Assembly: GCA_053919585.1 (NCBI GenBank) | Contig: JBSSHM010000258.1 | Strand: one strand, 5' to 3' | Length of the DNA: 64,000 bases | From: Euprymna scolopes | Lineage: Eukaryota | Shown here: positions 18,091 through 38,942 of the stretch, piece by piece | Layout: each line of letters opens with the position of its first letter | How positions within the stretch are numbered: the stretch's first letter is position 1 | The notes under the pieces: model-generated | Databases searched by the model: none | The model's input: the letters and a program-made list of their open reading frames with translations, nothing else | Told to the model about the DNA's origin: nothing | Position numbers and translations under genes: made by a program

Positions 18091-18098
18091 AATATAGC

Positions 18099-18981: not shown

Positions 18982-19009
18982 AATTGTTTTTATTCACTTA
19001 TAGCATTTT

Positions 19010-19795: not shown

Positions 19796-19825
19796 AAGTG
19801 AATAGATAAAAATAATCTGTTTTTT

Positions 19826-21033: not shown

Positions 21034-21055
21034 AGTATGTTTTTGATCATGCATA

Positions 21056-21451
21056 TTAATGGGATAGGATTTCAATTTCATAGCCGTCAGGGTCTCTAAT
21101 AAATGCCATGAGTGTATTACTGTCTTTTAGTACATAGGGTTCTAGCATGATTTCACCCTCAAGCTCATTAATTTTTTCACGGAAATTTTCAATAAACTCT
21201 TTGACATTTGGTACAGAAATAGCAATATGCCCATAAGCATTTCCCCTCTGGTATTCTGTTTTCCCCCAGTTGTAAGTAAGCTCTAAAACCGTTGTGTCAT
21301 TTTCCTCTCCATAACCCAAAAATGCCAAAGTAAACTCACCACTAGGATAGTCTTTTTGTCTTAATAGTTGCATACCCATTACTTGGCTATAAAAATCAAT
21401 GGATTGTTGCAAATTCTTTACCCTTAACATGGTGTGTAAAATACGCATCAT
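21056..21451 (-). CDS. gloA: Lactoylglutathione lyase (glyoxalase I)
   Basis: [32 protein letters not shown]. Confidence 0.95.
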
Positions 21452-22976: not shown

Positions 22977-24263
22977 CTATAGATATTTTTTCACCCGAAT
23001 ATCTGCAGTACGGGCATGTGCTTCCATCCCTTCTAAACGTGATAAACGTGCAGTCGCTTTACCCACATATTCAGTGGCATGCTTATCTAAACGTTGATAA
23101 GATAAGACTTTAATGAATTTTTGTACAGACAAACCACCTGTGTATTTTGCTACGCCTCTTGTTGGTAACACATGATTTGTGCCTGAGCATTTGTCACCGT
23201 ATGCAACGGTAGTTTCTTCACCCAAAAATAGTGAGCCGTAATTATTAAGATTTTCTAACCACCAGTTTAATTCTTGTGCTTGTATTTCTAAGTGTTCAGC
23301 AGCGTATTCATCACTAACTTGCACCATTTCCTCTCGTGTATCACATAGGACAACTTCTCCATATTCTGCCCATGAAGTCTCAGCAGCATTTCTGGCATCT
23401 TGAGGTAATTCTTCAATTAATTGGGGAACACGTTGGATAACTTTTTCTGCCAATTTTCTGTCATCAGTAATCAGCCAAGCGGGTGAATCTAAGCCATGTT
23501 CTGCTTGTCCAACAAGATCAACTGCCACAATCTCTGCATCAGCAGTTTTATCGGCAATAATTGCAATTTCTGTTGGTCCTGCAATTTGATCAATACCAAC
23601 GCCACCAAATAATTGACGTTTAGCTTCAGCAACGAAACGATTACCTGGTCCAACTAACATATTAACAGGTGTGATGCCAAAAAAACCATTGGTCATGGCA
23701 GCAACGCCCTGCACTCCTCCCATAGAGAGAATCTTATCTGCACCACAATAGTTCATAGTATAGAGAATATGTGGATCAATGCCCTCTTCTCCTCTCGGCG
23801 GAGAACAGGCAACAATTTTTTTAACGCCAGCAATTTTTGCTGTAGTAATGGTCATAATTGCACTACAAATATGAGCATAGCGCCCACCGGGTACATAGCA
23901 ACCTACACTATGAATGGGACGCAGAACATGACCGGCAAAAACACCTGGAGTGAGTTCCACCTCACACTCTCCAAGAGCATTTTTTTGTGCTTCAGCAAAA
24001 CGACTAACGTTAACATGAGCATAATGAATATCTTCTTTTGCTTGATCGCTTATTTTTGCACTAGCCTCTTCTATTTGCTTAGTAGTAACTAAAGGATTGC
24101 CTTTGTAATTATCTAATTTCTCAGCATATTCTAGTGCTTTTTTCTCACCATCAGCAGCGGACATTTCTTGTAACATTGTTGTGACAACGGCTTCTGTATC
24201 AGCATTGGCAGTGGCAAATTGTGAAAAATCTGCCTGAGATTTTTTAAGATAGGTAATTGACAT
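22977..24263 (-). CDS. hpsN: Sulfopropanediol (DHPS) 3-dehydrogenase, HisD-like family
   Basis: HpsN-clade features from memory: MSITYLKK start, CYVPGGRYAHI, QAEHG, EETTVAYGDKCSGTNHVLPT, LEGMEAHAR; cotranscribed with suyAB. Confidence 0.85.
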   Translation of the reverse strand: MSITYLKKSQADFSQFATANADTEAVVTTMLQEMSAADGEKKALEYAEKLDNYKGNPLVTTKQIEEASAKISDQAKEDIHYAHVNVSRFAEAQKNALGECEVELTPGVFAGHVLRPIHSVGCYVPGGRYAHICSAIMTITTAKIAGVKKIVACSPPRGEEGIDPHILYTMNYCGADKILSMGGVQGVAAMTNGFFGITPVNMLVGPGNRFVAEAKRQLFGGVGIDQIAGPTEIAIIADKTADAEIVAVDLVGQAEHGLDSPAWLITDDRKLAEKVIQRVPQLIEELPQDARNAAETSWAEYGEVVLCDTREEMVQVSDEYAAEHLEIQAQELNWWLENLNNYGSLFLGEETTVAYGDKCSGTNHVLPTRGVAKYTGGLSVQKFIKVLSYQRLDKHATEYVGKATARLSRLEGMEAHARTADIRVKKYL

Positions 24264-24290
24264 AATAAATTCTCACATAAATTTGATGAC

Positions 24291-25463
24291 TTAAGCACTA
24301 CGATACAATTTAGTCATCACAAACTCTTTATGTTTGAGAATTTCAGCCATTGTATAACGCCCACTTGCCGTTTCTAAAATATTTTCCTTTAGCAAATCAC
24401 CTGCTTGATCAATAGTGATTTCACGAGTTAATACTCCAGAAACATCAACATCTACATGTTCACCCATTGTTCGAACAGTTCTTGGATTTCCCGTGATTTT
24501 CACTACGGGTACAACAGGATTGCCAACAACATTACCTTGACCAGTAGGAAAAGTGTGTACAACATAACCTGCAGCTGCCATTAATGTTACGCATTCAGCA
24601 GCAGCAGAAGAAGTGTCCATAAAATAAAGTCCATTTCCTTTGGAGGGTGCTTCTGCCGGTTTAAGTACATCAATGTACTTCACTTTACGTCCAATTTTTT
24701 CTAAGTTTCCTAGGGCTTTTTCTTCTATTGTAGTTAATCCTCCAAGAATGTTGCCTTTTGTTGGTTGGGAATCGGATAAATCAGAAGTTTTATGAGGTTC
24801 AATAACTTCATCTTGGTAGGCTTGCCATGTTGCCATGAATTTCTCTGCTGCTTCAGGCGTGGCTGCACGTTCTTTACAAAGATGCTCTGCACCGGTAATC
24901 TCAGAGGTTTCACCAAAAACACCATAAAGACCTTTGGGAATCCATTTGTCATACATATTCCCCACTGCTGGACATGATGAGAGTCCTGTTGTTGTATCAG
25001 ATTCTCCACATTTTGTGGATACCCATAAATCACTAATAGCACATTCTTCACGTCGCCATCCACTTGTTTGGTGTACCAATTCATGCGCCATACGAGAAGC
25101 CTCAGCAATGGTATTTATATCACCTTTTTGCTCAATAGAGAAAGCTTCAACTCGTTTGCCTGTTTTACGAATACCATCAGCTATAATATTCGTCCAACCT
25201 GGTTCAATACCAATCACGACAACAGTGGCAATGTTTGGATTGCTGCCAATACCAATCATCGTCCGAAAATGTAACTCAAGGTCCTCACCAAATTGCAAAC
25301 GACCATAGGAATGAGGCAAAGCTAATGTACCATGAATATTTGCTGCAACGGCTTCACAAGCTGCGTTTGAAATATCATCAACTGGTAAAATGGCGACATA
25401 ATTTCTTACTCCTACTCGTCCATTTTCACGACGATAACCTAAAAATAATTCATTATTACTCAT
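24291..25463 (-). CDS. suyB: (2R)-sulfolactate sulfo-lyase beta subunit (UxaA family)
   Basis: [44 protein letters not shown]; split alpha/beta architecture next to hpsN. Confidence 0.87.
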
Positions 25464-25524
25464 AATTTTAATCTCAATATCTATTTTATTATCTTAATAA
25501 TTTGTACTTGTCTTTATTGCTTTT

Positions 25525-25812
25525 TTACCATCTTTTGGTTTTTAAATTATGTGTATGCACATGCTCACCTTTGCCCACAGCTTGAATGATTTTACCGATA
25601 TCTTGTCCATATTTTATAACGGTATCTCCTTTAGCAAAGTCTTGTAGAGCAATTTTATGACCAATAGGCACATCATCTTTAGAAACTAATTCAAATTGTG
25701 AATTGTCCTCTGTAGTAACACAGAGCATAGAAGTAGATTGACTAAGCCCTTCAACAACGACAACACCAACATTGTCTTTTTTGTGATGAACTAGTAATTG
25801 TGGTTTTGACAT
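25525..25812 (-). CDS. suyA: (2R)-sulfolactate sulfo-lyase alpha subunit (SAF domain)
   Basis: DNVGVVVVE, VPIGHKIAL..VIKYG..GEHVHTHNLKTKRW. Confidence 0.87.
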   Translation of the reverse strand: MSKPQLLVHHKKDNVGVVVVEGLSQSTSMLCVTTEDNSQFELVSKDDVPIGHKIALQDFAKGDTVIKYGQDIGKIIQAVGKGEHVHTHNLKTKRW

Positions 25813-25862
25813 AAATTTCTCCTTAATCTTTTATATTTTTTTACAAATTCATATTATTTGAT

Positions 25863-27476
25863 TTATTTGTTATCCGATAGAATCATATCCGAGGCTTTTT
25901 CGGCAATCATAATTGCTGGTGCATTGGTATTGCCTGATACAATGGTTGGCATAATTGAACAGTCAACCACCCGCAATCCTTCTACTCCATGTACCTTTAG
26001 CTTGTGATCAACAACCGCAGTTTTATCATCCTTATTTCCCATTTTACATGTACTTGTTGGGTGATAAATGGTTTGACTATATTGCCTAGCAACATGCAAT
26101 AATTCATCATCACTCTGATAGCGATTACCCGGGACAAATTCATCAATGATATGTTTTTTCAATGAAGGTGCTTGAGCAATTTTACGTGCAACTTTTATGG
26201 AATCAATAGCAACTTTTTGATCCCTTTCATCACTGAGATAATTTGGATAAATCTTTGGATAATCCAAAGGATTGCTTGATTGGATTTCTATTTTTCCTCT
26301 ACTATAAGGTCTTAATTGACATACAGAGGCGGTGAATGCAGAGAAAGGATGAACGCCATCTCCTGGCTTATCAGCACTAAGTGGCTGCATATGAAACTGA
26401 ATATCTGGACGTGTAAGTTGTGGATTTGACATGGTAAAAACAGCTACTTGGCTTGCCGCAAGAGTTAATGGTCCAGTTCGGAATAATCCATATTGAATAC
26501 CCACTTTCATTTGCTTAATGTAACTATTTAGTTCGTCATTCAATGTAGCAAGACTTGTTTTGTAAACCAATCGAATTTGCAAGTGATCTTGTAAATTTTG
26601 ACCAACACCGGGCAATTCTTTAACCACATCAATATTAAATTTTTTCAATAATTCTTTATCACCAATTCCTGAAAGTTGTAGTAATTGAGGAGAGTTAATT
26701 GCTCCGCCACTTAATATCACTTCTTTGTGGCATTTAATCACGTGGGTTTTGTTTTTATGAATGCATTCAACTCCTACAGCTCTTCCTTCTTCAAAAATAA
26801 CCTTTGTCACTTGAACACATGTTTTGATAGCAAGATTTTTTCTTCTGCGAATAGGATGGATGTAGGCTCTTGCTGAGCTATGACGAAAACCTTTGTGTGC
26901 TGTTTGTTCAAAATATGACACACCCTCTTGAACTTCTTCATTATATTTTTCGTTATATGGAATACCAATTTCTTGTGCTGCTTGTACAAAATGTTCTGCA
27001 ATTTCTCTGCGTAAACGAAGATTGGATACAACCAATGGTCCTTTGTCTGAGCGATAAGAAGAGAGCTTTCCTTTTCTGTTCTCAGATTTTTTAAAATATG
27101 GCAAGACATCTTTGAATGACCATCCTGTATTACCCTCTCTTTCCCAGTCATCATAATCTTCACGTTGACCCCGTACATACAATAAACCATTTAATGAACT
27201 TGAGCCACCCATTACTTTTCCACGAGGCCATTGTAAAGAGCGATTGTTGATTCCTTCGTCAGGCTCAGTTTTGTAACACCAATCCCATTTTTTACTATGC
27301 ATAGTTTTAAAATAACCCACAGGAATGTGAATCCAAGGAGAATAATCCCAGCTTCCTGCTTCCAATAGAACTACTTTATTTTTAGGGTCTTCCGACAAAC
27401 GATTTGCAACGACACAACCTGAAGAACCAGCACCAACAACAATGTAATCACACTCACTAAAAGAATACGTACTCAT
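25863..27476 (-). CDS. GMC-family FAD oxidoreductase, substrate unknown
   Basis: GAGSSG, PRGKVMGGSSSLNG, VGQNLQDH, YHPTSTCKMG, GNTNAP. Confidence 0.92.
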   Translation of the reverse strand: MSTYSFSECDYIVVGAGSSGCVVANRLSEDPKNKVVLLEAGSWDYSPWIHIPVGYFKTMHSKKWDWCYKTEPDEGINNRSLQWPRGKVMGGSSSLNGLLYVRGQREDYDDWEREGNTGWSFKDVLPYFKKSENRKGKLSSYRSDKGPLVVSNLRLRREIAEHFVQAAQEIGIPYNEKYNEEVQEGVSYFEQTAHKGFRHSSARAYIHPIRRRKNLAIKTCVQVTKVIFEEGRAVGVECIHKNKTHVIKCHKEVILSGGAINSPQLLQLSGIGDKELLKKFNIDVVKELPGVGQNLQDHLQIRLVYKTSLATLNDELNSYIKQMKVGIQYGLFRTGPLTLAASQVAVFTMSNPQLTRPDIQFHMQPLSADKPGDGVHPFSAFTASVCQLRPYSRGKIEIQSSNPLDYPKIYPNYLSDERDQKVAIDSIKVARKIAQAPSLKKHIIDEFVPGNRYQSDDELLHVARQYSQTIYHPTSTCKMGNKDDKTAVVDHKLKVHGVEGLRVVDCSIMPTIVSGNTNAPAIMIAEKASDMILSDNK

Positions 27477-27600
27477 ATAATAAAAACAATAAAAAATTTA
27501 ATAGCGACAATAAAGATTGCTAATCAAGAAAATTTTAGCAAAAAAATCCTTGGTGAACAAATTAAATAAAAATTAAATTCGTAATTTTTATAAAAATCCA

Positions 27601-27630
27601 TTGACAATCTTACAATAGTTTGGTTAAATT
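27601..27630 (+). promoter_or_regulatory. Sigma-70 promoter for the TRAP operon
   Basis: Perfect TTGACA at 27601, 17-18 bp spacer, ttaaat/taaatt -10. Confidence 0.6.
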
Positions 27631-27638
27631 TTGCAAAT

Positions 27639-27846
27639 GCTATTCTAATATATCAAGCATCATCTAGGCAGGATATGTGCTTGTGCTAATTATAAATCTA
27701 ACAGATACATATCTTGCGTAGTCTAAGTAGTTAAACACTTTCTACAATTCAGTGGTAGTACTTTAAACTCAAGCATGACGGGTTGGAATAGCTAAAAAGG
27801 CTTTTGCATGTATTCTTTTTTTAGATAACTAACTGAGAATAAATGC
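27639..27846 (+). ncRNA. Candidate structured 5' leader RNA
   Basis: 11-bp closing stem 27639-49/27782-92, 12-bp inner stem 27668-79/27706-17, third hairpin 27806-16/27836-46. Confidence 0.4.
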
Positions 27847-27895
27847 TAGAGATTAATAACTTATAAAAATTTTATTTTAATGGAGTAGTTGTATT

Positions 27896-29002
27896 ATGCA
27901 TAACTTTAAAAAAATTATTGGACTTGCTTTAGTAGGTCTATTTGCGTTAGGTTCTGTAGCACACGCAAAAACCACGAAAATTCGTGTTCAATCTGTTTTA
28001 CCAACTAAGGCAGACGAAGTTGTCATGTTGAAAGATTTTGCCGATAACGTCAAACAATTGACTAACGGTTCTGTTCAATTAGAAATTCTTCCTGCTGGAG
28101 CAGTTGTTGGTGTTAAAGAAACATTGGAAGCTGTTGACAAAGGACTTATTGAGGGTGGATTTGCTTGGACTCACTATTGGTCTGGTTATCATCCTGCAGC
28201 CATGTTATTTGGTTCACCTGTTGCGGGTGCTGGCGTAGGTATTGATAATATTGCTTTTATTTCTTGGTTTATGTATGGAGGCGGTAAAGAACTCTATGAT
28301 CAACTGTGGAAAGAAATGAAGATGAACATTAAAGGAATCATGCTTCAGCCGGTTGGACCTGAGGCTCTAGGTTGGTTTAAAAAGCCAATTAAAAGCATGG
28401 CTGATTTCCGTAAATATCGTTTCCGTACACCTCCTGGACTCCCTGGGCAAACTTATAAAGATATTGGTATTGCTGCTGTTGCTATGGGCGGTGGTGATAT
28501 TCTCCCTGCACTGGAAAAAGGCGTTATTGATGCTGCTGAATGGTGCTGTCCTAAACCAGATAGCGTGTTTGGTTTCCAAAAAGTACTTAAGCACTATTAC
28601 CTACAAGGGCTTCATCAGGTGGTTGTGAATGCAGATTTATACATCAATGGTAATGTATGGAAAAAGCTTACTGCTGATGAGAAAAATGCAATCAAAGTCG
28701 CTGCCGATGCTTCACTAATCCGTTCACTGTCTTACAGAATTTATGAAAATGGTAAAGCATTGAAAGATTTGACAGAAAATTGGGATGTACAACTTCATGA
28801 TACACCTGAAGATTATTTTGTTGAGTATATGGATGCAGCTAAGAAATTGTTAAACAAAAATGCTAAGAAAAATAAATTCTTTGCAAAAGTTTGGCAATCA
28901 CAAAAAGACTTTGCACGCATTGCCGTACCTTATTGGGCTGGAGCTCAAACTGCTAATGCAAACTTGGGACAAGCTTATGCTCAAAGTATTATGAAGAAGT
29001 AA
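27896..29002 (+). CDS. dctP: TRAP transporter substrate-binding protein
   Basis: Signal peptide, EILPAGAVV, FRTPPG, ALEKGVIDAAEW. Confidence 0.93.
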   Translation: MHNFKKIIGLALVGLFALGSVAHAKTTKIRVQSVLPTKADEVVMLKDFADNVKQLTNGSVQLEILPAGAVVGVKETLEAVDKGLIEGGFAWTHYWSGYHPAAMLFGSPVAGAGVGIDNIAFISWFMYGGGKELYDQLWKEMKMNIKGIMLQPVGPEALGWFKKPIKSMADFRKYRFRTPPGLPGQTYKDIGIAAVAMGGGDILPALEKGVIDAAEWCCPKPDSVFGFQKVLKHYYLQGLHQVVVNADLYINGNVWKKLTADEKNAIKVAADASLIRSLSYRIYENGKALKDLTENWDVQLHDTPEDYFVEYMDAAKKLLNKNAKKNKFFAKVWQSQKDFARIAVPYWAGAQTANANLGQAYAQSIMKK

Positions 29003-29029
29003 ATATCCCTACAATAAAATGTTTCTTTA

Positions 29030-29067
29030 AAGGGGGATGGTTTTTTTAACAACTGTCCCCCTTATTT
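29030..29067 (+). terminator. Stem-loop after dctP (terminator or mRNA stabiliser)
   Basis: aagggggatggtt / aactgtccccctt stem. Confidence 0.65.
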
Positions 29068-29099
29068 GTATTTAATCTAAAAAAAACTTACATAATCTT

Positions 29100-29702
29100 A
29101 TGTCTACCACGAATGAACCTCAATTTGAAGTTGCTGATGAGTTGATCGCAGAGGGTCATCAGTATCAACCTCCTCCAGAGGACATGGCTTCTTGGATGAG
29201 AAAAATAATTATTTTTATTGATGCATTTAGCTACTATACAGGAAAAATTGTTAGCTGGCTGACTGTACCAATTATCGCAGCTATGTTTTATGAAGTTGTC
29301 GCCAGACACTTTTTTCTTGCTCCTACTGTTTGGGCATATGATATTAGTAGAATGCTTTATGGAGCCTTGTTTATGCTGGGTGCTGGTTATGCCCTTATGC
29401 GTGGAGTCCATATTCGAGCAGATTTTATTTATAGAAACTGGCAACCAAAAAATCAAGCTAAAATCGATTTACTCTTATACCTAACCCTTTATTTTCCAAC
29501 GATGATTGTTTTTTTCTTCGTAACTTTTGACTATGCTTCAGAAGCATGGATGCGAGGTGAGAGAGGCATGGATACGGCATGGATGCCTCCAATGGCTCCA
29601 ATCAAATCAACTATTCCTATTGGAGTAAGCTTTTTAATTATCCAAGGTGTTTCTGAAACATTGAAATGCTATTATGCTATTAAAAAGAATGTTTGGCCAT
29701 AA
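29100..29702 (+). CDS. dctQ: TRAP transporter small permease
   Basis: Four TM helices, YEVVARH, HIRAD. Confidence 0.92.
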   Translation: MSTTNEPQFEVADELIAEGHQYQPPPEDMASWMRKIIIFIDAFSYYTGKIVSWLTVPIIAAMFYEVVARHFFLAPTVWAYDISRMLYGALFMLGAGYALMRGVHIRADFIYRNWQPKNQAKIDLLLYLTLYFPTMIVFFFVTFDYASEAWMRGERGMDTAWMPPMAPIKSTIPIGVSFLIIQGVSETLKCYYAIKKNVWP

Positions 29703-29811
29703 AAAGTCAGATAAATAAGTTCCATTCTTTTTACACATTAAGATTAGTTCTATGTTAGTCTACGTGTAATCAGTTTATAAAAATTAATTACAAAAAAATA
29801 CTACAACAATC

Positions 29812-31137
29812 ATGTCTCCCGAAATTCTTGGTCTCGTGCTGATAGGATCTATGCTCTTTGCTATCTTTATCGGCTTTCCTATTTCTTTTACCCTAATTTT
29901 TCTTGGCTTAGTTTTTGGTTATGCTGGCTTTGGAGATTTAGTTTTTTATCTCATGACTTTTCAATTTAATAATGTCATGTTAGAGCAAACGCTTGCAGCC
30001 GTCCCTCTATTTATCTTTATGGGAATATTGATGGAAAAGGCAAATCTCATGGAGCGTTTATTTACAGCTGTACAACAAATGCTTTCTCGTGTTAACGGTT
30101 CATTGTTTATTGCTGTGTTATTTGTTTCAACTATTTTTGCCGCTGCAACAGGCATTGTTGGTGCTTCTGTCACTATCTTAGGGATTATGGCTGCAAAAAC
30201 CATGAATCGCTCTAATTATGATGTTAAACTGGCTGCTGGAACCATCACTGCCGGAGGCACATTAGGTATTCTTATTCCACCAAGTATCATGTTGGTTGTG
30301 ATGGGACCTATTCTCGAAGTTCCTGTTACCGATCTTTTTGCTGCGGCCATCATTCCTGGAATAATGCTGGCTTTTTTATATTCTGCATATGCTATTATTC
30401 GTTGCTATTTAAACCCTTCATTAGGTCCAGCACTGTCAGAAGAAGAAAGACCAAAATCCATGGCGCATGTATGGAGAGAATTTTTCCTCGGACTTGTCCC
30501 ACCAGCTGCACTTGTTGGTTGTGCTTTAGGTAGTATCGTGTTTGGTCTGGCAACTCCTACTGAAGGTGCTGGTATTGGTGCAGTAGGTGCTCTTGCTCTT
30601 TCTGCATCTTATGGAAAACTTAACATGTCTAACTTAAAAGATGCATTGATTAAAACATTAGAGATTTCTACATTGATTTTAGTCTTAGTTGCTGCATCTA
30701 ACTTCTTTGGTGCTGTTTTCTCTAGACTAGGCACACCTACAATGGTTACCGAATTATTGCTTGGGTTAGATATGCACCCAATGATTATCCTGCTTCTTAT
30801 TATGGCAGTTATCTTCTTACTTGGCTGGCCTTTAGAATGGGTTCCTATTGTATTGATTGTTATCCCTATTTTGTTGCCTTTAATCAATGAATTGGGAATT
30901 AATCTTCTTTGGTTTGGTATATTGGTGGCTGTGAATTTACAGACTGCTTGGCTCTCCCCACCCGTAGCACTCTCCGCATACTTTCTTAAAGGAGTTGTAC
31001 CGGAGTGGGATCTCAAGGATATTTATTATGGAATGATGCAATTTATGGTTATTCAGGGTATTGGTTTAACATTGATTATACTGTTCCCAGAAATTGCGAC
31101 ATGGTTACCAGAATATCTAACAAATAAGCCTGGTTAA
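29812..31137 (+). CDS. dctM: TRAP transporter large permease
   Basis: AVPLFIFMG, GGTLGILIPPSI, TPTE, LSPP. Confidence 0.95.
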   Translation: MSPEILGLVLIGSMLFAIFIGFPISFTLIFLGLVFGYAGFGDLVFYLMTFQFNNVMLEQTLAAVPLFIFMGILMEKANLMERLFTAVQQMLSRVNGSLFIAVLFVSTIFAAATGIVGASVTILGIMAAKTMNRSNYDVKLAAGTITAGGTLGILIPPSIMLVVMGPILEVPVTDLFAAAIIPGIMLAFLYSAYAIIRCYLNPSLGPALSEEERPKSMAHVWREFFLGLVPPAALVGCALGSIVFGLATPTEGAGIGAVGALALSASYGKLNMSNLKDALIKTLEISTLILVLVAASNFFGAVFSRLGTPTMVTELLLGLDMHPMIILLLIMAVIFLLGWPLEWVPIVLIVIPILLPLINELGINLLWFGILVAVNLQTAWLSPPVALSAYFLKGVVPEWDLKDIYYGMMQFMVIQGIGLTLIILFPEIATWLPEYLTNKPG

Positions 31138-31160
31138 GTCATTATATTAGTGAATAATTA

Positions 31161-32135
31161 ATGACGGTACTTATTTTTCCTATAATAGCCCTTATTGGAG
31201 GGTTGGTTGTGCTGACGTATAGTGCAGATTATTTCACAGATGGAGCTATTTCTCTTGCGAAAAATCTCAACATATCAACCCTCACTATTGGACTATTTGT
31301 ACTAGGTTTTGGTACATCTGCACCTGAAATGGTTATCTCTGCTCTTTCAAGCTTTGAGGGGTTAAGTGGGTTAGCAGTTGGTAATGTTATTGGATCAAAT
31401 ATTGCCAATGTCGGCTTAGTATTAGGTATTTCTGCTTTAATTTTCCCAATACCCATTAAAAAAAGAACGCTTAAGTTTGAAACTACATTGATGATAATTA
31501 TTTCTATAATTGTTGTCATAGCAATGTTATGGGATAAAAAACTAGATGTAAGCGATGGTTGGTTGTTAGTTTTCTTATTTTTATCAGTTATTGCATTATT
31601 CTATTATCAGTCTATTCGTCGAAAATCAAAAAAATGTGATAATGACAGCTTAATGTTAGATGATGAAATTGATATGTCTTTGCAGAAATCAGTTTTTATT
31701 ACAATTACTTCCTTAGTTTTCCTAGTGCTAAGTGCTCGTATAACGGTATGGGGAGCATCAGGGATAGCTTCATATTTCTCCATTAGTGATACATTTATTG
31801 GTTTAACGATTATTGCTATTGGTACCAGTCTGCCGGAGCTTGCGGCGGCAGTGAGTGCCAGTTTAAAAAAACATTCTGATTTAACCATTGGCAATATTCT
31901 AGGTTCAAATCTTTTCAATCTTCTAGTTGTTTTGCCCTTCCCTGCTTTTGTAAGCGGTTTTCAAATCTCTGAACGTTTTGTCTACTTAGATATACCGGTT
32001 ATGTTAGGATTGTCGTTACTGATTCCAGTTGTGGCATTATTGAATAAGCATATGCAAATTAATCGTATTAGTGGCATGATAATGTTATCTATATATATTG
32101 GTTATATAGGAACACTACTTGCACTAACTTATTAA
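31161..32135 (+). CDS. Ca2+/Na+ antiporter (YrbG/CaCA family)
   Basis: Alpha repeats GTSAPE..GNVIGSN and GTSLPE..GNILGSN. Confidence 0.92.
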   Translation: MTVLIFPIIALIGGLVVLTYSADYFTDGAISLAKNLNISTLTIGLFVLGFGTSAPEMVISALSSFEGLSGLAVGNVIGSNIANVGLVLGISALIFPIPIKKRTLKFETTLMIIISIIVVIAMLWDKKLDVSDGWLLVFLFLSVIALFYYQSIRRKSKKCDNDSLMLDDEIDMSLQKSVFITITSLVFLVLSARITVWGASGIASYFSISDTFIGLTIIAIGTSLPELAAAVSASLKKHSDLTIGNILGSNLFNLLVVLPFPAFVSGFQISERFVYLDIPVMLGLSLLIPVVALLNKHMQINRISGMIMLSIYIGYIGTLLALTY

Positions 32136-32212
32136 CCAAAATCCTTATAATAGAAGTTGTTTATTATGGGTTATCTATATGATCTTTTTCATACTCAATA
32201 ATTAAATGCATA

Positions 32213-32274
32213 AAAACAATATCTTTTTTTTAGATATTGTTTTGAAAATATATCAAATAAATTAGATATTGTTT
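32213..32274. promoter_or_regulatory. 12-bp inverted repeat plus third half-site upstream of prx-cysJIG
   Basis: aaaacaatatct-T7-agatattgtttt, then agatattgttt again at ~32264. Confidence 0.35.
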
Positions 32275-32361
32275 GCTTTATAATTTATTTATAAGTTTGA
32301 TTTCATTGCATTATTGCAAAAATATCAATTTTTATTAACAAACAAAAACAAAAACAAAGAC

Positions 32362-32994
32362 ATGGCAATTCAACTCGGAGACATTGTTCCTGATTTTCAA
32401 CAGGACTCAACACAAGGAACTATTTCATTTCATGAATGGTTAGGCGATAGCTGGGGAGTTTTATTCTCTCATCCAAAAGACTTTACACCAGTTTGCACCA
32501 CGGAATTAGGACGAGCAGCTGCATTAAAAGATGGCTTTGCCAAACGCAATGTAAAAATTATTGGTTTATCTGTTGACGGTTTAGAGAATCATGAAAAGTG
32601 GTTTGAAGATATTAAAGAAACTCAAGGGCAAGAAGTTAATTTTCCTGTGATTGCTGATCATGATAGGAAAGTTTCTGGTCTATACGGCATGATTCACCCT
32701 AATGCCAGTGATACACTCACCGTGCGTTCTGTTTATGTGATTGATCATAATAAAAAGCTTCGATTAACCATTACGTATCCAGCTAGTACCGGACGTAATT
32801 TTGATGAGCTATTACGTGCTATTGATAGCTTACAGCTTACTGATAATTACAAAGTTGCTACCCCTGTTGATTGGAAATCTGGTGATGATGTTATTATCGT
32901 ACCTGCTATTAGCAATGAACAAGCAAAAGAACTTTTTCCTCAAGGATGGGACGAACAAAAACCTTATTTGCGAGTCGTTAAACAACCGGGTTAA
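32362..32994 (+). CDS. 1-Cys peroxiredoxin (Prx6/LsfA-like)
   Basis: FSHPKDFTPVCTTE, YPASTGRNFDE; ATG 32362. Confidence 0.93.
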   Translation: MAIQLGDIVPDFQQDSTQGTISFHEWLGDSWGVLFSHPKDFTPVCTTELGRAAALKDGFAKRNVKIIGLSVDGLENHEKWFEDIKETQGQEVNFPVIADHDRKVSGLYGMIHPNASDTLTVRSVYVIDHNKKLRLTITYPASTGRNFDELLRAIDSLQLTDNYKVATPVDWKSGDDVIIVPAISNEQAKELFPQGWDEQKPYLRVVKQPG

Positions 32995-33017
32995 TATTTT
33001 ATTCATCCCTACATATT

Positions 33018-33051
33018 ATAAAAAGGTCTCTTAATTGGGACCTTTTTATTT
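33018..33051 (+). terminator. Intrinsic terminator after peroxiredoxin
   Basis: ataaaaaggtctc-ttaatt-gggacctttttat. Confidence 0.7.
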
Positions 33052-33080
33052 AGTCATTTGGACTTCCAAAATCTAAAACT

Positions 33081-34844
33081 ATGCGAGATTATACTCAACT
33101 TATACAAGAGATTAAACAATTAGATAGAGATTCACTTCTCCGTCTCAGTGGATTTTTGGATGCATTGCTTGTTGATTCAACCCTAGCATCGATAACTACC
33201 ATACCCGATAGCGCCAACCCAAATGTTAATGAATCAAGCAAGGTTCTTGTTGCCTTTGCTTCACAAAGTGGTAATGCTGAAAATATTGCTTTACAGTTAA
33301 CTGAAAAGCTACAAGCTGCTCCTAACTATGACATTACGTTAACTGATGTTTCCGAGCTAAATATTAAAAAGCTTAACCACTATCATTATATTTTTATTAT
33401 TGCCAGTACACATGGAGAAGGTGAACCACCAGATACCGCTATACAATTTCATGAACAACTTAAATCCAATCGTGCCCCTAAATTAGAAGGAGTTGAATAT
33501 GGAGTTATTGCACTGGGAGATAGTAGCTATGAGCAGTTTTGTTCATTTGGAATATGGATTGATCAGCGTTTATCTGAATTAGGTGCAAAGTCTTTGATTG
33601 AACGACTTGATTGTGATGTAGATTATGATGATACAGTTGAAAAATGGCAGGATAAACTCACAGATGCGTTGTCTACAAGCAACCATATACAATCCCCTAC
33701 TCAAGCGAATAATCAAGTTGCTAAACATACTGGCAACTATACAATTAAAAACCCGTTAGAAGTTGAGGTTATCTCTAACATTGATTTATGTACGGATAAA
33801 GCGAATAAACATGTCCACCATCTAGAATTAGAGCTTCTAAGTGAGGAAATAAGTTATTTACCCGGTGATAGTTTAGGAATTTCAATCAGCAATCCTGAAA
33901 AAATGGTTGATGAATTGATTGCTTTATTAGGTTTGGCTGAAGATGAAGAAGTTGAATTCAATCATAAGAATTATACTCTTAAAGAATGTTTGAATCACGA
34001 TGCTGAATTGTTCAGAATCACACAAAAACAATTAGATTCTTTAGTGAAAAAACATCCAAATAAAGAGCTAAAAAGAGCCATGGATAGCTCTCAAGATATT
34101 TCAGAGTTTATTTTTAGCCAAGATTGGTTAAGCTTACTTAGGCATTATACTAAAAGCCCATTTACACAAGCTCAAGAATTTATTGATTATCTTAATCCTC
34201 AGGGACAAAGATTGTATTCTATTGCTTCAAGCCCTCTTGCTCATGAAGATGAAGTACATCTGTCTATTCGTCTTCGTGAATTTGGTGATGAAAAAAGGTT
34301 GGGGTTGATTTCTGACAAAATAAGCCAAGTTAATGATGGCGATAAAGTAAACGTTTATCTCAAGCCTAATAAAAATTTTCGTTTGCCAAATGATGATTCT
34401 ACACCAATTATTATGATTGGCTCAGGAACTGGCATTGCCCCATTTAGAGCTTTTTTATTTCATCGCTTAGAACTTGGTATCACTTCACCTGCTTGGCTAT
34501 TTTTTGGTGAGCAATCTTTCAGGAATAGCTTCCTCTATCAAACTGACTGGTTAAAGTTAATTGAAAAAAAATCACTTACTGAATTTACTGTTGCCTTTTC
34601 TCGAGAAGAAAAAGAAAAATACTACGTACAAGATAGATTGCGAGAAAATTCTAAAGAAGTCTATCAATGGATCGAACAAGGAGCAATTATCTATGTATGT
34701 GGAAGTGCTGAAGGGATGGCAGCCTCTGTACATAACGCCTTGATTGATATTATCAGTGAACAGTCTGGAGTAAATAATGAAGCAGCAACTCAAAAACTTC
34801 AACAACTCATGATAGAAGGAATGTATAAACGAGATGTTTACTAA
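33081..34844 (+). CDS. cysJ: Sulfite reductase (NADPH) flavoprotein
   Basis: Flavodoxin SQSGNA/STHGEGEPPD, RLYSIASS, GTGIAPFR, YVCG, YKRDVY. Confidence 0.94.
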   Translation: MRDYTQLIQEIKQLDRDSLLRLSGFLDALLVDSTLASITTIPDSANPNVNESSKVLVAFASQSGNAENIALQLTEKLQAAPNYDITLTDVSELNIKKLNHYHYIFIIASTHGEGEPPDTAIQFHEQLKSNRAPKLEGVEYGVIALGDSSYEQFCSFGIWIDQRLSELGAKSLIERLDCDVDYDDTVEKWQDKLTDALSTSNHIQSPTQANNQVAKHTGNYTIKNPLEVEVISNIDLCTDKANKHVHHLELELLSEEISYLPGDSLGISISNPEKMVDELIALLGLAEDEEVEFNHKNYTLKECLNHDAELFRITQKQLDSLVKKHPNKELKRAMDSSQDISEFIFSQDWLSLLRHYTKSPFTQAQEFIDYLNPQGQRLYSIASSPLAHEDEVHLSIRLREFGDEKRLGLISDKISQVNDGDKVNVYLKPNKNFRLPNDDSTPIIMIGSGTGIAPFRAFLFHRLELGITSPAWLFFGEQSFRNSFLYQTDWLKLIEKKSLTEFTVAFSREEKEKYYVQDRLRENSKEVYQWIEQGAIIYVCGSAEGMAASVHNALIDIISEQSGVNNEAATQKLQQLMIEGMYKRDVY

Positions 34845-34855
34845 GAAATAAAAGA

Positions 34856-36601
34856 ATGACTATGACAAACACAAAAAAATCTCCACCAGAGAAAATTCTG
34901 ACATTAAATGAATTAGTAAATAATCCAAGTGCTAATGAGACAATTAAAGATAATAGCAATTATCTTAGAGGAACGATTGCCGAGGATTTAGAAACTAATA
35001 TAACTGCTAATATCAGTGATGATAATTCTCAGCTTACAAAGTTTCATGGCACCTATATACAAGATGATCGTGATGAGAGATTAATACGTCAGAAAAAAAA
35101 GTTAGAGCCTTCATGGTCGTTCATGACTCGAGTTCGTATACCAGGTGGCGTATTAAATGCTGAGCAATGGCAAGCAATGGATGATATTGCTGATATATTT
35201 GCTGGCAGCAAACTTAAGCTAACCACTCGGCAAGCTATTCAATTCCATGGAATTATCAAATTTGAACTAGCTGATTCAATGAAAGCCATTCATCAAGCAA
35301 GTATGGATTCTATTGCTGCTTGCGGTGATGTAAATAGAAATGTCATGTGTTCCCCTATTCCTGTTGGTAACTCCATTCATAATGAAACATTAGAATGGGC
35401 TACTCGTATTAGTGAACATCTTCTTCCCAGTACTAATGCTTGGTTTGATATTTGGATTGATGGTAAAAAAACTCCCACAGAGGGAAATATTGAAAAAGAA
35501 CCCATTTATGGTAAACACTATTTGCCTCGTAAATTCAAAATTGCCATTGCCATTCCGCCACTTAATGATACCGATATATTTTCAAATGATATTGCATTAA
35601 TTGCCATTGAAAAAGATGGAAAATTACTTGGCTTTAATGTTTGTGCTGGAGGTGGTTTGGGGACCACTCATTCTGATGATAGCACCTATCCTCGCTTGGC
35701 TACACCTTTGGGATTTTGCAAAGCAAATGATATTTTAACAGTGTGTGAGCATATTATGACCATTCAGCGTGATTATGGCAATCGCAGTGAAAGAAAAAAT
35801 GCACGTTTAAAATATACTATGGATAGGGTTGGAGTCCAATGGTTTAAAGAAGAGTTAGAAAATCGTTCAAAAATCAAGCTTAGCAGCATCAAACCTTATC
35901 AGTTCACTCACAACGGTGATCCCTATGGTTGGAGTGAAGATGCTAATAAAAAGTCCTATATTGTCCTTTTTATTGAACATGGGCGTGTTTTTGATACGGA
36001 TAAACATAAGCTTAAAACAGCATTGCGTAAAATTGCCAATGAAAAAATTTGTGATTTTCGTTTAACAGGAAATCAAAATCTAGCCCTAGGAAATATAGAA
36101 TCTGCTGATAAAAAGAAAATTGAAAGCATTTTTAAAGAGGCTGGTTATCCTATAGATTGTTCTGATTTTAGTGGAATGCGTAAACATGCAATAGCTTGTG
36201 TTGCTCTACCCACTTGTGCACTTGCCATGGCAGAGGCACAACGCTATTTACCAGACTTAGTTGGAAAAATCGAACCTATTTTACAACGCAATAATTTATT
36301 TAATGACGACATCAATATTCGTATGACAGGATGCCCAAATGGGTGTGGTCGTCCATGGTTAGGAGAAATCGGTTTTATTGGCAAATCACCCGGGCGATAT
36401 AATATGTATCTTGGTGCAGCTTTTGATGGTACTCGTTTAAATGCTTTATATAAAGAGAATTTAAATGAAGCAAGCATCTTAGAAGAATTAGAAACAATGA
36501 TTTGTGACTATGCAAAGAAACGTAAAAAAAATGAGAAATTTGGTGATTTTGTTATTCGTTCGGGAATAATAAAGGAATTTAAAGCCCCCGTCTCCCTTTA
36601 A
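34856..36601 (+). CDS. cysI: Sulfite reductase hemoprotein
   Basis: KFHGTYIQDDRD, ACGDVNRN, YLPRKFK, ACVALPTC, TGCPNGC. Confidence 0.96.
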   Translation: MTMTNTKKSPPEKILTLNELVNNPSANETIKDNSNYLRGTIAEDLETNITANISDDNSQLTKFHGTYIQDDRDERLIRQKKKLEPSWSFMTRVRIPGGVLNAEQWQAMDDIADIFAGSKLKLTTRQAIQFHGIIKFELADSMKAIHQASMDSIAACGDVNRNVMCSPIPVGNSIHNETLEWATRISEHLLPSTNAWFDIWIDGKKTPTEGNIEKEPIYGKHYLPRKFKIAIAIPPLNDTDIFSNDIALIAIEKDGKLLGFNVCAGGGLGTTHSDDSTYPRLATPLGFCKANDILTVCEHIMTIQRDYGNRSERKNARLKYTMDRVGVQWFKEELENRSKIKLSSIKPYQFTHNGDPYGWSEDANKKSYIVLFIEHGRVFDTDKHKLKTALRKIANEKICDFRLTGNQNLALGNIESADKKKIESIFKEAGYPIDCSDFSGMRKHAIACVALPTCALAMAEAQRYLPDLVGKIEPILQRNNLFNDDINIRMTGCPNGCGRPWLGEIGFIGKSPGRYNMYLGAAFDGTRLNALYKENLNEASILEELETMICDYAKKRKKNEKFGDFVIRSGIIKEFKAPVSL

Positions 36602-36630
36602 TGCTAAATTCAAAGAAAGCTTAAATTCGT

Positions 36631-38088
36631 GTGTCTTATTTTCCTTTCTTTTTTGATCTCAAAAAGTTTCGCATTCTCGTTATTGGTGGTGGAGATATTG
36701 CATTAAATAAAATTCGACTACTTTCATCTTACCAAGCTAATATCACGGTTATTGGCTTAGAAATTAAAGAAGAGATTCGGCAAAGATTACAAGCAAATCA
36801 GTATTCACAAATCCACCAGCGAGCATTTGATACTACTGATTTAGATGATGCTGATGTTGTTATAGTTGCCACTAATAACCAAGAGTTAAATACACAAGTT
36901 TGGAAGCTTGCTAAAGAAAAAAATAAAATCGTTAATGTGGTTGATGATAAAGATAAATGCGATTTTATCTTCCCTGGAATTGTCAACAGAGGAGAATTGA
37001 CTATTGCTATCAGCACCTCTGGTGTGGCTCCTACTATTGCTAGTTGGTTTCGTGGAAAATTAGAAAGTGAAATACCGCAATCTTGGTCTGCTATTCTGCA
37101 ATCACTTAAAAAACAGCAAAAAAATATCCGCAAAAACCTTCCTGATATTCGTCATAGAAGGCGATTTTACAGAAGTTTACTTGAAAATATTCTTCCACGC
37201 TTTCTAAAACAGCAACGCCCATCTCATGAAAATATAACTGAAAAAATAAGCAAACCGAGTTCATTTAATATTGAAGAAATTGAACACCATATCCTGCAAC
37301 ATCTCTCCTCCCATAATAATACGAGTAATTCTGAAAATTATTCATCGATTAAACAAGCTAAAGTTTATCTAGTTGGTGCAGGTCCAGGAGATCCTGAGTT
37401 GCTGACATTACGTGCCTTACAAACCATTCAACAAGCAGATGTCATACTCTATGATCGACTAATTAGCAATGAGTTATTAGACTATAGTCGCCGTGATGCA
37501 GAAAAAATATTTGTTGGTAAACAAGCAAAAAATCACAGCAAAACTCAACAAGAAATTAATCAATTACTTATCAATTTAGCGAAAAAAGGTAATGTCATTG
37601 TTCGACTTAAAGGTGGCGATCCCTTTATTTTTGGTCGTGGTGGTGAAGAAATGGATATACTGCAAAAAAATAATATTGATGTGGAGATTGTCCCTGGAAT
37701 TAGTGCTGTAAACGGTATTGCTGCTGATCTTGGCATTCCACTAACTCTTAGAGGAATCTCTGATAAACTACTACTAACCAGCATTTATGCTACACAACCT
37801 CATCCAGTAAATTGGCAACAACTCACTCTACCACGCCAAACCCTAGCTCTGTACATGGGTTTGCAAAACCTCTCTGAAATCAGCACGCAACTTATTGCTC
37901 ATGGTCTACAGGCAAACACTCCCATTGCTCTAATAGAAAAAGGAACCTTTCTTAATCAAAAAGCACACTACAGCACTTTACAATACACTCGGTCAGAAAC
38001 CTATGTGCAACAAACTGGATTCCAATCTCCTGTGCTAAGTATTATTGGTGAAGTGGTTAATCATCGTAAAAAAATTTACAAAGATTAA
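36631..38088 (+). CDS. cysG: Siroheme synthase
   Basis: VIGGGDIA N-domain; LVGAGPGDPELLT, RLKGGDPFIFGRGGEE. Confidence 0.95.
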   Translation: MSYFPFFFDLKKFRILVIGGGDIALNKIRLLSSYQANITVIGLEIKEEIRQRLQANQYSQIHQRAFDTTDLDDADVVIVATNNQELNTQVWKLAKEKNKIVNVVDDKDKCDFIFPGIVNRGELTIAISTSGVAPTIASWFRGKLESEIPQSWSAILQSLKKQQKNIRKNLPDIRHRRRFYRSLLENILPRFLKQQRPSHENITEKISKPSSFNIEEIEHHILQHLSSHNNTSNSENYSSIKQAKVYLVGAGPGDPELLTLRALQTIQQADVILYDRLISNELLDYSRRDAEKIFVGKQAKNHSKTQQEINQLLINLAKKGNVIVRLKGGDPFIFGRGGEEMDILQKNNIDVEIVPGISAVNGIAADLGIPLTLRGISDKLLLTSIYATQPHPVNWQQLTLPRQTLALYMGLQNLSEISTQLIAHGLQANTPIALIEKGTFLNQKAHYSTLQYTRSETYVQQTGFQSPVLSIIGEVVNHRKKIYKD

Positions 38089-38870: not shown

Positions 38871-38942
38871 TATAAAAGCAAATTTTGTGCAATACTTTAA
38901 AAAAATTATTACTTTGAATGGTTTATATTATCAGTATGCTAA

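What the first reader, a model, noticed from the sequence alone, without database searches (positions are those of the whole stretch)
22977..38088. Sulfonate catabolism physically linked to assimilatory sulfite reduction, without sulfate activation genes
Seen: prx-cysJ-cysI-cysG lie just downstream of the TRAP genes. cysH, usually attached to cysJI, and cysDNC are absent here, as are a sulfite exporter or sulfite dehydrogenase. Established: SuyAB releases sulfite, CysJI reduces it to sulfide, and LsfA-type 1-Cys peroxiredoxin is sulfate-starvation-induced in Pseudomonas. Inference: this organism may use algal DHPS as its sulfur source as well as a pyruvate source, possibly being unable to use sulfate.
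Basis: partly seen in the sequence, partly recalled or inferred. Interest (0 to 1): 0.7.

Follow-up and report, generated by a model that had tools for sequence, protein, structure and literature searches.

The report
Sulfonate genes beside sulfite reductase operon
A bacterium whose DNA sits in a squid genome assembly carries genes that split sulfite off a sulfonate right next to genes that reduce sulfite for cysteine synthesis, with no sulfate-activating genes nearby; its relatives suggest sulfite rather than sulfate is its way into sulfur metabolism, but the side-by-side position is peculiar to this genome and has not been shown to matter.

Summary
No cysH, cysD, cysN, cysC, TauE-type exporter or sulfite dehydrogenase was found in the 64 kb.

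For it:
- prx-cysJ-cysI-cysG is the standard operon of a small gammaproteobacterial clade.
- Two clade members carry cysH-cysD-cysN(-cysC) between cysI and cysG, so that is where sulfate activation sits when present.
- The closest named relatives are four octocoral-symbiont genomes (CysI 81% identical). A published gene table gives them sulfite reductase, cysE, SuyAB-type and taurine-dioxygenase genes, but no sat, cysN or cysD/cysH.

Against it:
- The adjacency is not conserved. It was absent from 88 other suyB loci and 7 other prx-cysJI loci, and the two blocks lie 560 kb apart in one 1.92 Mb relative.
- The relatives have TauE-family genes.
- Co-transcription is untested.
- The transporter's binding protein is unlike the known DHPS binder.
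- The rest of this genome could not be searched.

Feeding sulfonate-derived sulfite to CysJI is textbook, so this is of moderate interest.

The parts
22977..24263 (-). hpsN: sulfopropanediol (DHPS) 3-dehydrogenase, 428 aa
   Evidence: It matches solved Sulfopropanediol 3-dehydrogenase 8v35 at E 6e-152 (510 bits), against 240 bits for the best histidinol dehydrogenase. Pfam assigns Histidinol_dh. It is 85% identical to the HpsN of L002.
24291..25463 (-). suyB: sulfolactate sulfo-lyase large subunit, 390 aa
   Evidence: Pfam assigns GD_AH_second plus GD_AH_C. It is 91% identical to P0001, which JGI names (2R)-sulfolactate sulfo-lyase subunit beta.
25525..25812 (-). suyA: sulfolactate sulfo-lyase small subunit, 95 aa
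   Evidence: The ORF was found. It matches the N-terminal part of the galactarate dehydratase model. It is 89% identical to the small ORF upstream of suyB in L002-L005.
25863..27476 (-). GMC-family FAD oxidoreductase, 537 aa; first gene of the minus-strand unit; substrate unknown
   Evidence: Pfam assigns GMC_oxred_N and GMC_oxred_C, and it passes the NCBIfam choline dehydrogenase subfamily cutoff. It is kept in the same module in L002-L005 (81% identical) and in L008 (65% identical).
27896..29002 (+). TRAP transporter solute-binding protein (DctP family)
   Evidence: Pfam assigns DctP. It is 86% identical to the L002 copy. It scores only 29.8 bits to the solved DHPS binding protein 24gc, against 118 bits to 4yzz.
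29100..29702 (+). TRAP small permease (DctQ)
   Evidence: Pfam assigns DctQ. It is 78% identical to the L002 copy.
29812..31137 (+). TRAP large permease (DctM)
   Evidence: Pfam assigns DctM and it passes the TIGR00786 cutoff. It is 92% identical to the L002 copy.
31161..32135 (+). Ca2+/Na+ antiporter family (YrbG-like) membrane protein; last gene of the TRAP operon
   Evidence: It has two Na_Ca_ex domains and passes TIGR00367. The same gene follows dctM in L002-L005, at 65% identity.
32136..32361 (+). AT-rich spacer between the antiporter gene and prx, holding three exact copies of an 11-mer, two of which form a 12-bp A/U hairpin
   Evidence: The sequence was read. The 11-mer copies lie at 32214(-), 32232(+) and 32264(+). 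The fold has z -2.5. The scan called no G+C-rich terminator here, and promoter-like sites occur at chance frequency.
32362..32994 (+). 1-Cys peroxiredoxin (Prx6/LsfA type), 210 aa
   Evidence: Pfam assigns AhpC-TSA plus 1-cysPrx_C. The translation shows the PVCTTE motif. It scores 323 bits to the bacterial Prx6-type structure 6p0w. It is the first gene of the operon in all 7 relatives examined.
33081..34844 (+). cysJ: sulfite reductase flavoprotein, 587 aa
   Evidence: It has flavodoxin, FAD_binding_1 and NAD_binding_1 domains. It scores 584.8 bits to TIGR01931, below the equivalog cutoff of 668. It is 69% identical to the L001 copy.
34856..36601 (+). cysI: sulfite reductase hemoprotein, 581 aa
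   Evidence: It passes NF010029 (769 bits, cutoff 457) and TIGR02041 (759.8 bits, cutoff 756.55). It aligns with E. coli CysI over 549 residues, and the two cysteine pairs of the cluster/siroheme site are kept.
36631..38088 (+). cysG: siroheme synthase, 485 aa; starts 29 bp after cysI
   Evidence: It passes NF007922 with 500 bits against a cutoff of 400. The junction sequence was read.
38085..39869 (-). hemD and hemC (uroporphyrinogen-III synthase, hydroxymethylbilane synthase), convergent on cysG; context only
   Evidence: Both were assigned by NCBIfam. They supply the precursor of siroheme. This neighbourhood is not kept in relatives.

Best explanation
The window comes from a low-GC (35%) gammaproteobacterium. 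Its nearest named relatives are 'Ca. Thioglobaceae' symbionts of octocorals. Here it is present as a bacterial contig in a squid genome assembly. Two independent units lie head to tail.

Unit 1 is a C3-sulfonate module that recurs in relatives. A TRAP transporter plus a Ca/Na-antiporter-family protein is transcribed divergently from GMC oxidoreductase-suyA-suyB-hpsN. HpsN oxidises (R)-DHPS to (R)-sulfolactate. SuyAB then cleaves sulfolactate to pyruvate and sulfite.

Unit 2 is the clade's standard prx-cysJ-cysI-cysG operon. CysG makes siroheme, and CysJI reduces sulfite to sulfide with NADPH for cysteine synthesis.

This operon form has no cysH, cysD or cysN, and the closest described genomes lack sulfate activation altogether. 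So sulfite released from organosulfonates is probably the organism's inorganic entry to sulfur assimilation, instead of sulfate. Here that means DHPS or sulfolactate; relatives also have the genes to use taurine.

Shown: gene identities, intactness, order, and the comparative pattern. Inferred: the sulfite flux from SuyAB to CysJI, the inability to use sulfate in this particular genome, and the transported substrate.

The adjacency itself is best read as a lineage-specific rearrangement. It coincides with the absence of the two IclR regulator genes and the SDR gene that flank the module in the nearest relatives. It is not an evolved, conserved super-operon.
For: -
- The sulfonate module is conserved at 65-92% identity in L002-L005, with the same gene order including the antiporter.
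- The prx-cysJ-cysI-cysG block is found in L001 (81%), L013 (82%), L007 (68%) and L014 (69%), with only 0-29 bp between cysI and cysG in these loci and the window.
- L010 (78%) and L011 (76%) carry cysH-cysD-cysN(-cysC) between cysI and cysG.
- L001 is MAG LS06H_Bin4: 1.97 Mb, 96.5% complete, 'Ca. Thioglobaceae'.
- In Table S3 of PMC9502895, LS06H_Bin4 and its three sister MAGs score 0 for COG2046 (sat), 0 for COG2895 (cysN) and 0 for COG0175 (cysD/cysH).
- The same four MAGs score 1 for COG0155 (cysI), 1 for COG0007 (cysG), 1 for COG1045 (cysE), 2 for COG2721 (SuyA/B type), 3 for COG0141 and 1 for COG2175 (tauD).
- One 1.92 Mb contig holds both units.
- No remnant of cysH, cysD, cysN or cysC is present in the window.
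Against: - The rest of this bacterium's genome was not available, so cysDN, sat or cysH could lie elsewhere.
- The COG evidence comes from relatives at only 81% CysI identity, and from draft genomes assembled from metagenomes.
- The adjacency is absent from all 88 other suyB loci and all 7 other prx-cysJI loci.
- Relatives have TauE/SafE-family genes (COG0730, 1-2 copies) and a COG2041 gene, so most sulfite may be exported or oxidised.
- If the sulfonate is also a carbon source, sulfite production far exceeds the sulfur demand of biomass.
- No expression data exist; no sequencing run was listed.
- The binding protein is not of the known DHPS type.
Confidence: 0.55

Rival explanations
1. The adjacency is coincidental. 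Two unrelated units ended up side by side through rearrangement. Sulfate activation genes lie elsewhere in this genome, CysJI serves ordinary sulfate assimilation, and SuyAB sulfite is exported or oxidised.
For: - The linkage is not conserved in any relative.
- Each unit stands alone elsewhere with different neighbours.
- The spacer before prx is 226 bp with a hairpin.
- Some clade members (L010, L011) do have cysH, cysD and cysN.
- On the CysI tree the window groups with L010 and L011 at moderate support, 90/96.
Against: - In L010 and L011 the activation genes sit inside this operon, where the window has only 29 bp.
- No remnants are present in the 64 kb.
- The four nearest described genomes lack them genome-wide.
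Confidence: 0.2
2. CysJI acts as a detoxifier. The sulfonate is used mainly for carbon and energy (pyruvate). Prx-CysJI-CysG mainly removes toxic sulfite and associated oxidative damage inside the cell, and sulfur assimilation is a by-product.
For: - One sulfite is released per three carbons, far more than biomass needs.
- A peroxiredoxin leads the operon in every relative.
- No exporter is present in the window.
Against: - Reducing surplus sulfite costs 3 NADPH each and yields toxic sulfide.
- Relatives have TauE-family exporters.
- CysE and CysK are kept in relatives, which fits assimilation.
Confidence: 0.15
3. The genes form an evolved super-operon. The TRAP operon reads through into prx-cysJIG, so that uptake, desulfonation and sulfite reduction are co-regulated.
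For: - The units have the same orientation.
- No G+C-rich terminator was called between the antiporter gene and prx.
- The IclR regulator genes that follow the antiporter in relatives are absent here.
Against: - The arrangement is unique to this genome.
- The A/U hairpin at 32212-32243 could act as a terminator.
- The prx operon is self-standing in 7 relatives, so it has its own promoter there.
- No RNA data exist.
Confidence: 0.1

Closest known systems
DHPS degradation pathway HpsN-SuyAB with HpsO/P and a TRAP or MFS importer (Cupriavidus pinatubonensis, roseobacters)
   Same: HpsN is a clear orthologue of the solved enzyme. SuyA and SuyB are both present. A TRAP importer lies alongside.
   Different: - There are no hpsO/hpsP-type genes; relatives have an SDR gene, with or without a Zn-ADH gene.
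- A GMC oxidoreductase leads the operon.
- The binding protein is unlike the solved DHPS binder.
- A Ca/Na-antiporter-family gene ends the transporter operon.
- No exporter or regulator gene is present.
Sulfonate-sulfur assimilation of E. coli and Pseudomonas (ssu/tau systems feeding sulfite to CysJI; LsfA peroxiredoxin in the sulfur-starvation response)
   Same: Sulfite is released from a sulfonate and reduced by CysJI, bypassing sulfate activation. A Prx6-type peroxiredoxin is tied to sulfur genes (PMC12581299, PMC4199769).
   Different: - Those bacteria use oxygenases (SsuD, TauD) rather than a lyase.
- They keep the full cysDNC/cysH pathway.
- They regulate through CysB/Cbl.
- Here the desulfonating enzyme is of the carbon-catabolic type, and no regulator gene is present.
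prx-cysJ-cysI-cysG operon of 'Ca. Thioglobaceae'-related genomes, e.g. octocoral symbiont MAG LS06H_Bin4 (PMC9502895)
   Same: The four genes are in the same order, with CysI 81%, CysJ 69% and CysG 66% identical. These genomes also hold SuyAB-type genes and lack sulfate activation.
   Different: In the relative the operon follows MOSC, Ldh_2 and GNAT genes rather than the sulfonate module. The closest copy of the module (L002-L005, 91% SuyB) is flanked by priA, gatCAB and two IclR genes.
Bacteria with sulfite reductase as the only assimilatory sulfate-reduction gene (e.g. Stenotrophomonas goyi, PMC10682605); sulfate-non-assimilating marine clades SAR11 and SAR86
   Same: Sulfate activation is missing in a bacterium that lives with other organisms. 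S. goyi keeps only sulfite reductase and cannot grow on sulfate.
   Different: SAR11 and SAR86 lack sulfite reductase as well. S. goyi is not linked to a sulfonate lyase. Here a sulfite source is encoded next door.

Membership tests
DHPS/sulfolactate desulfonation pathway (HpsN + SuyAB) | HpsN orthologue distinct from histidinol dehydrogenase | tested here: met
   It scores 510 bits to solved sulfopropanediol 3-dehydrogenase, against 240 bits to the best HisD.
DHPS/sulfolactate desulfonation pathway (HpsN + SuyAB) | Both lyase subunits, SuyA (small) and SuyB (large), encoded together | tested here: met
   A 95-aa ORF lies upstream of the 390-aa GD_AH protein. They are 89% and 91% identical to a pair named sulfolactate sulfo-lyase.
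DHPS/sulfolactate desulfonation pathway (HpsN + SuyAB) | HpsO/HpsP-type dehydrogenase pair for converting (S)- to (R)-DHPS | tested here: not met
   There is no SDR or Zn-ADH gene in the cluster. A tblastn search with the L002 SDR found nothing in the window. Relatives have them.
DHPS/sulfolactate desulfonation pathway (HpsN + SuyAB) | Importer specific for DHPS (HpsKLM-type TRAP or HpsU) | tested here: inconclusive
   A TRAP system is present and co-conserved with suyAB-hpsN. However, its binding protein scores only 29.8 bits to the solved DHPS binder 24gc. The ligand is unknown.
DHPS/sulfolactate desulfonation pathway (HpsN + SuyAB) | Sulfite outlet (TauE/SuyZ exporter or sulfite dehydrogenase) encoded with the pathway | tested here: not met
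   None is present among the ORFs of the 64-kb window. Relatives have COG0730 and COG2041 genes elsewhere in their genomes.
Assimilatory NADPH-sulfite reductase CysJI with siroheme synthase | CysI hemoprotein above the curated family cutoff, with cluster/siroheme cysteines | tested here: met
   It scores 769 bits to NF010029 (cutoff 457) and 759.8 bits to TIGR02041 (cutoff 756.55). The cysteine pairs align with E. coli CysI.
Assimilatory NADPH-sulfite reductase CysJI with siroheme synthase | CysJ with flavodoxin, FAD and NAD(P) domains | tested here: met
   All three domains are present. The TIGR01931 score of 584.8 bits is below the equivalog cutoff of 668, so this is a divergent member.
Assimilatory NADPH-sulfite reductase CysJI with siroheme synthase | Siroheme synthase available | tested here: met
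   CysG scores 500 bits to NF007922 (cutoff 400) and starts 29 bp after cysI.
Complete assimilatory sulfate reduction (cysDN or sat, cysC, cysH plus cysJI) | Sulfate activation and (P)APS reduction genes present | tested here: not met
   They are absent from the window. They are absent from the four nearest described genomes according to a published COG table. The rest of this genome cannot be tested with these tools.
Prx6/LsfA-type 1-Cys peroxiredoxin | PVCTTE peroxidatic motif and the 1-Cys Prx C-terminal domain | tested here: met
   The motif is in the translation. Pfam assigns 1-cysPrx_C. It scores 323 bits to a bacterial Prx6-type structure.

The most novel reading that the evidence does not exclude
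A clade of small-genome marine and animal-associated Gammaproteobacteria has given up, or never had, sulfate activation in sulfate-rich seawater, yet keeps sulfite reductase. It meets its sulfur needs from sulfite cut out of organosulfonates such as DHPS, sulfolactate and taurine. This would be a third strategy beside full sulfate assimilation and the reduced-sulfur dependence of SAR11 and SAR86. In the squid-associated member, the lyase module and the reductase operon have come together and lost their regulators, giving a constitutive sulfonate-to-sulfide line.
Probability: 0.35. Interest if true: 0.6.

Novelty: new member of a known kind. Interest (0 to 1): 0.4.

Why it matters
If the lineage really depends on sulfonate-derived sulfite, it would add a distinct sulfur-acquisition strategy to those known for streamlined marine bacteria. 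It would also tie host- or diet-derived sulfonates directly to symbiont cysteine synthesis in animals such as squid and octocorals.

The comparison gives a simple marker: prx-cysJ-cysI-cysG with or without cysH-cysD-cysN between cysI and cysG. That marker could be surveyed in metagenomes.

As it stands, each part is a known enzyme system, and the route sulfonate to sulfite to CysJI is established biochemistry.

Tried and rejected
- **SAR86 origin.** I considered it because of the low GC and small genome, and rejected it because published SAR86 genomes lack any sulfite reductase.
- **Exact-protein look-up of SuyB.** Not on record.
- **Sequencing-run search for DNA or RNA holders of 27500-37499.** None was listed, so no read-level or expression test was possible and read laying was not used.
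- **CysI scan of JGI metagenomes.** No relatives were found.
- **Contig-length trick for the two complete relatives.** I looked for the 1.92 and 2.06 Mb contig lengths among the top 120 CysD homologues. None appeared. But all 120 hits are at least 79% identical, and L011's own CysD did not show up either, so the test is inconclusive.
- **Direction of change (loss or gain of cysHDN).** On the CysI tree the window groups with the two cysHDN-bearing loci at moderate support. A clade of the four inner-clade rows that lack cysHDN is not rejected (p-AU 0.085). The direction stays open.
- **Promoter and terminator scan.** Counts equal the shuffled expectation, so it is not informative.
- **The 11-mer upstream of prx.** It occurs 8 times in the window against 4.6 expected, which is not significant window-wide; only the local cluster of three is notable. 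No obvious counterpart lies upstream of prx in L001 or L007.
- **Rfam.** Only three tRNAs in the window, and no riboswitch near either unit.
- **Earlier notes of this scan.** They hold nothing on cysH, cysD or sat for this genome.


Full report
**What is there**

The window has 35% G+C and is bacterial throughout. Earlier notes of this scan place it in a squid/mollusc genome assembly, so it is a symbiont, associate or contaminant contig. Between thiL (21730-22794) and hemD/hemC (38085-39869) lie twelve intact genes.

On the minus strand are a GMC oxidoreductase, suyA, suyB and hpsN. On the plus strand are dctP, dctQ, dctM, a Ca/Na-antiporter-family gene, a 1-Cys peroxiredoxin, cysJ, cysI and cysG.

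- HpsN is securely assigned. It scores 510 bits to the solved sulfopropanediol 3-dehydrogenase, against 240 bits to histidinol dehydrogenase.
- SuyB is 91% identical to a protein that JGI names sulfolactate sulfo-lyase beta.
- CysI passes both curated cutoffs and keeps the cysteine pairs of E. coli CysI.
- CysG passes its cutoff.
- CysJ has all three domains but scores below the equivalog cutoff.
- The peroxiredoxin has the PVCTTE motif and most likely starts at 32362, giving 210 aa as in relatives.

**Absences**

Every ORF of at least 150 aa in the window was scanned with Pfam or NCBIfam. None belongs to sulfate activation, (P)APS reduction, TauE/SafE or sulfite dehydrogenase families. A tblastn search with CysH, CysD, CysN and CysC from a clade relative found no remnant. 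This holds for 64 kb only.

**The two units are separate, recurrent modules**

The closest SuyB (91%) lies on marine or invertebrate metagenome contigs L002-L005. The sample names suggest the octocoral metagenomes of the study cited below, but this is my inference. There the gene order is IclR, IclR, antiporter, dctM, dctQ, dctP on one strand, divergent from GMC, suyA, suyB, hpsN and an SDR gene on the other. The flanking genes are priA, gatCAB and mreB. Protein identities to the window are 65-92%.

So the antiporter belongs to the transporter operon, and the window lacks the SDR gene and both IclR genes. No remnants of them were found. More distant copies (L006, L008) add an SDR gene, a Zn-ADH gene and a GMC gene, or xsc-pta.

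The CysI lineage is small: eight relatives at 67-82% identity, then a drop to 60% or less. In L001 (81%), L013 (82%), L007 (68%) and L014 (69%) the block prx-cysJ-cysI-cysG recurs. The upstream neighbours differ each time, and only 0-17 bp separate cysI from cysG. The window has 29 bp there.

**The adjacency is not conserved**

- None of the seven other prx-cysJI loci has a sulfonate module within 10 kb.
- None of 8 close and 80 further suyB loci (33 of them at least 15 kb long) has prx, cysJ, cysI or cysG within the fetched flanks.
- On one 1.92 Mb contig both units exist about 560 kb apart.

The 226-bp spacer before prx contains a 12-bp A/U hairpin, formed by two of three exact 11-mer copies, and has weak promoter-like hexamers. 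The consensus scans are at chance level. Co-transcription is neither shown nor excluded, and no sequencing run was listed.

**Sulfate activation**

Two clade members, L010 (78%) and L011 (76%), have prx-cysJ-cysI-cysH-cysD-cysN(-cysC)-cysG. When this clade has the activation genes, they sit exactly where the window has 29 bp.

Whether the four-gene form is ancestral or the result of losses is unresolved. The tree places the window nearest L010 and L011 at moderate support. A clade of the inner-clade rows that lack cysHDN is not rejected (p-AU 0.085).

L001 is MAG LS06H_Bin4, an octocoral symbiont classed as 'Ca. Thioglobaceae' (1.97 Mb, 37.5% GC, 96.5% complete). In the paper's COG table, this MAG and its three sister MAGs have:

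- no COG2046 (sat), no COG2895 (cysN) and no COG0175 (cysD/cysH);
- one COG0155 (cysI), one COG0007 (cysG) and one COG1045 (cysE);
- COG0031 (cysK) in three of the four MAGs;
- two COG2721 (the SuyA/B type), three COG0141 and one COG2175 (tauD);
- also one or two COG0730 (TauE/SafE family) and one COG2041 (YedY/SorA-like).

The paper notes the sulfite reductase and the taurine pathways but does not draw the conclusion. It concerns relatives, not this genome.

**Reading**

The most likely picture is a sulfonate-to-sulfite-to-sulfide route for sulfur assimilation in a lineage without sulfate activation. Surplus sulfite probably leaves through TauE-type exporters encoded elsewhere.

The side-by-side position looks like a by-product of rearrangement and gene loss in this genome. 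Several genes in the window are split:

- trpA, 19010-19903;
- an accD-like gene, 18099-18822;
- a family-5 solute-binding protein, 48275-49439.

folC (16716-17522) is truncated rather than split. The trpA break is a one-base frameshift near an A-run, so assembly error cannot be excluded. All twelve sulfur genes are intact.

'Algal DHPS' is not established, for three reasons. The binding protein is far from the solved DHPS binder. The genes for converting (S)-DHPS are missing. The nearest relatives live in animals.

**Novelty**

Sulfonate sulfur entering assimilation as sulfite through CysJI is established from E. coli and Pseudomonas work (my own knowledge). LsfA-type peroxiredoxins belong to the sulfur-starvation response. 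A bacterium with sulfite reductase as its only sulfate-pathway gene has been described. SAR11 and SAR86 differ in lacking sulfite reductase too.

What is new here is a further member with an unusual, unconserved gene neighbourhood, together with the operon-level contrast within the clade.

Noticed in passing
window 31161-32135; L002 3437-4417: A Ca2+/Na+-antiporter-family gene is the conserved last gene of this TRAP operon in the window and in L002-L005 (65% identity). It is missing from the L006 and L008 versions. It might recycle Na+ for the TRAP system or export an anion; its role is unknown.
   Followed up: partly
L010 7444-17856; L011 7472-16989: Two clade relatives carry the whole sulfate assimilation pathway in one operon: prx-cysJ-cysI-cysH-cysD-cysN(-two APS-kinase genes)-cysG. 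The activation genes sit exactly between cysI and cysG.
   Followed up: yes
window 16716-21081 and 48275-49439: Several housekeeping genes are split or truncated:
- trpA is in two ORFs;
- an accD-like carboxyltransferase is in two ORFs;
- folC has its C-terminal part only;
- trpB lacks its C-terminal end;
- a family-5 binding protein is in pieces.

The trpA break is a one-base frameshift close to an A-run. These could be real gene decay or long-read assembly error.
   Followed up: partly
window 32214-32274: Three exact copies of an 11-mer (AGATATTGTTT) lie within 60 bp upstream of prx. Two of them form a 12-bp A/U hairpin with a U7 loop. This could be a weak terminator or an operator. No obvious counterpart exists in L001 or L007.
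   Followed up: partly
L001 5795-6895: In the octocoral symbiont, an Ldh_2-family gene two genes upstream of prx has L-sulfolactate dehydrogenase as its best NCBIfam match. The score is 214 bits, far below the cutoff of 500, with ureidoglycolate dehydrogenase close behind. This is a weak hint of another sulfonate gene beside the cys operon.
   Followed up: partly
window 27896-29002: The TRAP binding protein belongs to the mannitol/chloroaromatic-type branch (best solved matches 4yzz, 4yic and SmoM). It is only remotely like the solved DHPS binder 24gc, yet it is co-conserved with suyAB-hpsN in several lineages. It may be a second, uncharacterised type of sulfonate binder.
   Followed up: partly
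window 6398-6979 and 50331-50906: Two Rnf/Nqr-family membrane subunit genes lie 43 kb apart rather than in one operon. The octocoral 'Ca. Thioglobaceae' genomes are reported to be enriched in Rnf genes.
   Followed up: no
L013 6485-8949: In the closest CysI relative (82%, a long-read contig of 1.94x coverage), prx and cysJ are called in fragments. This is probably sequencing error at low coverage rather than decay.
   Followed up: no
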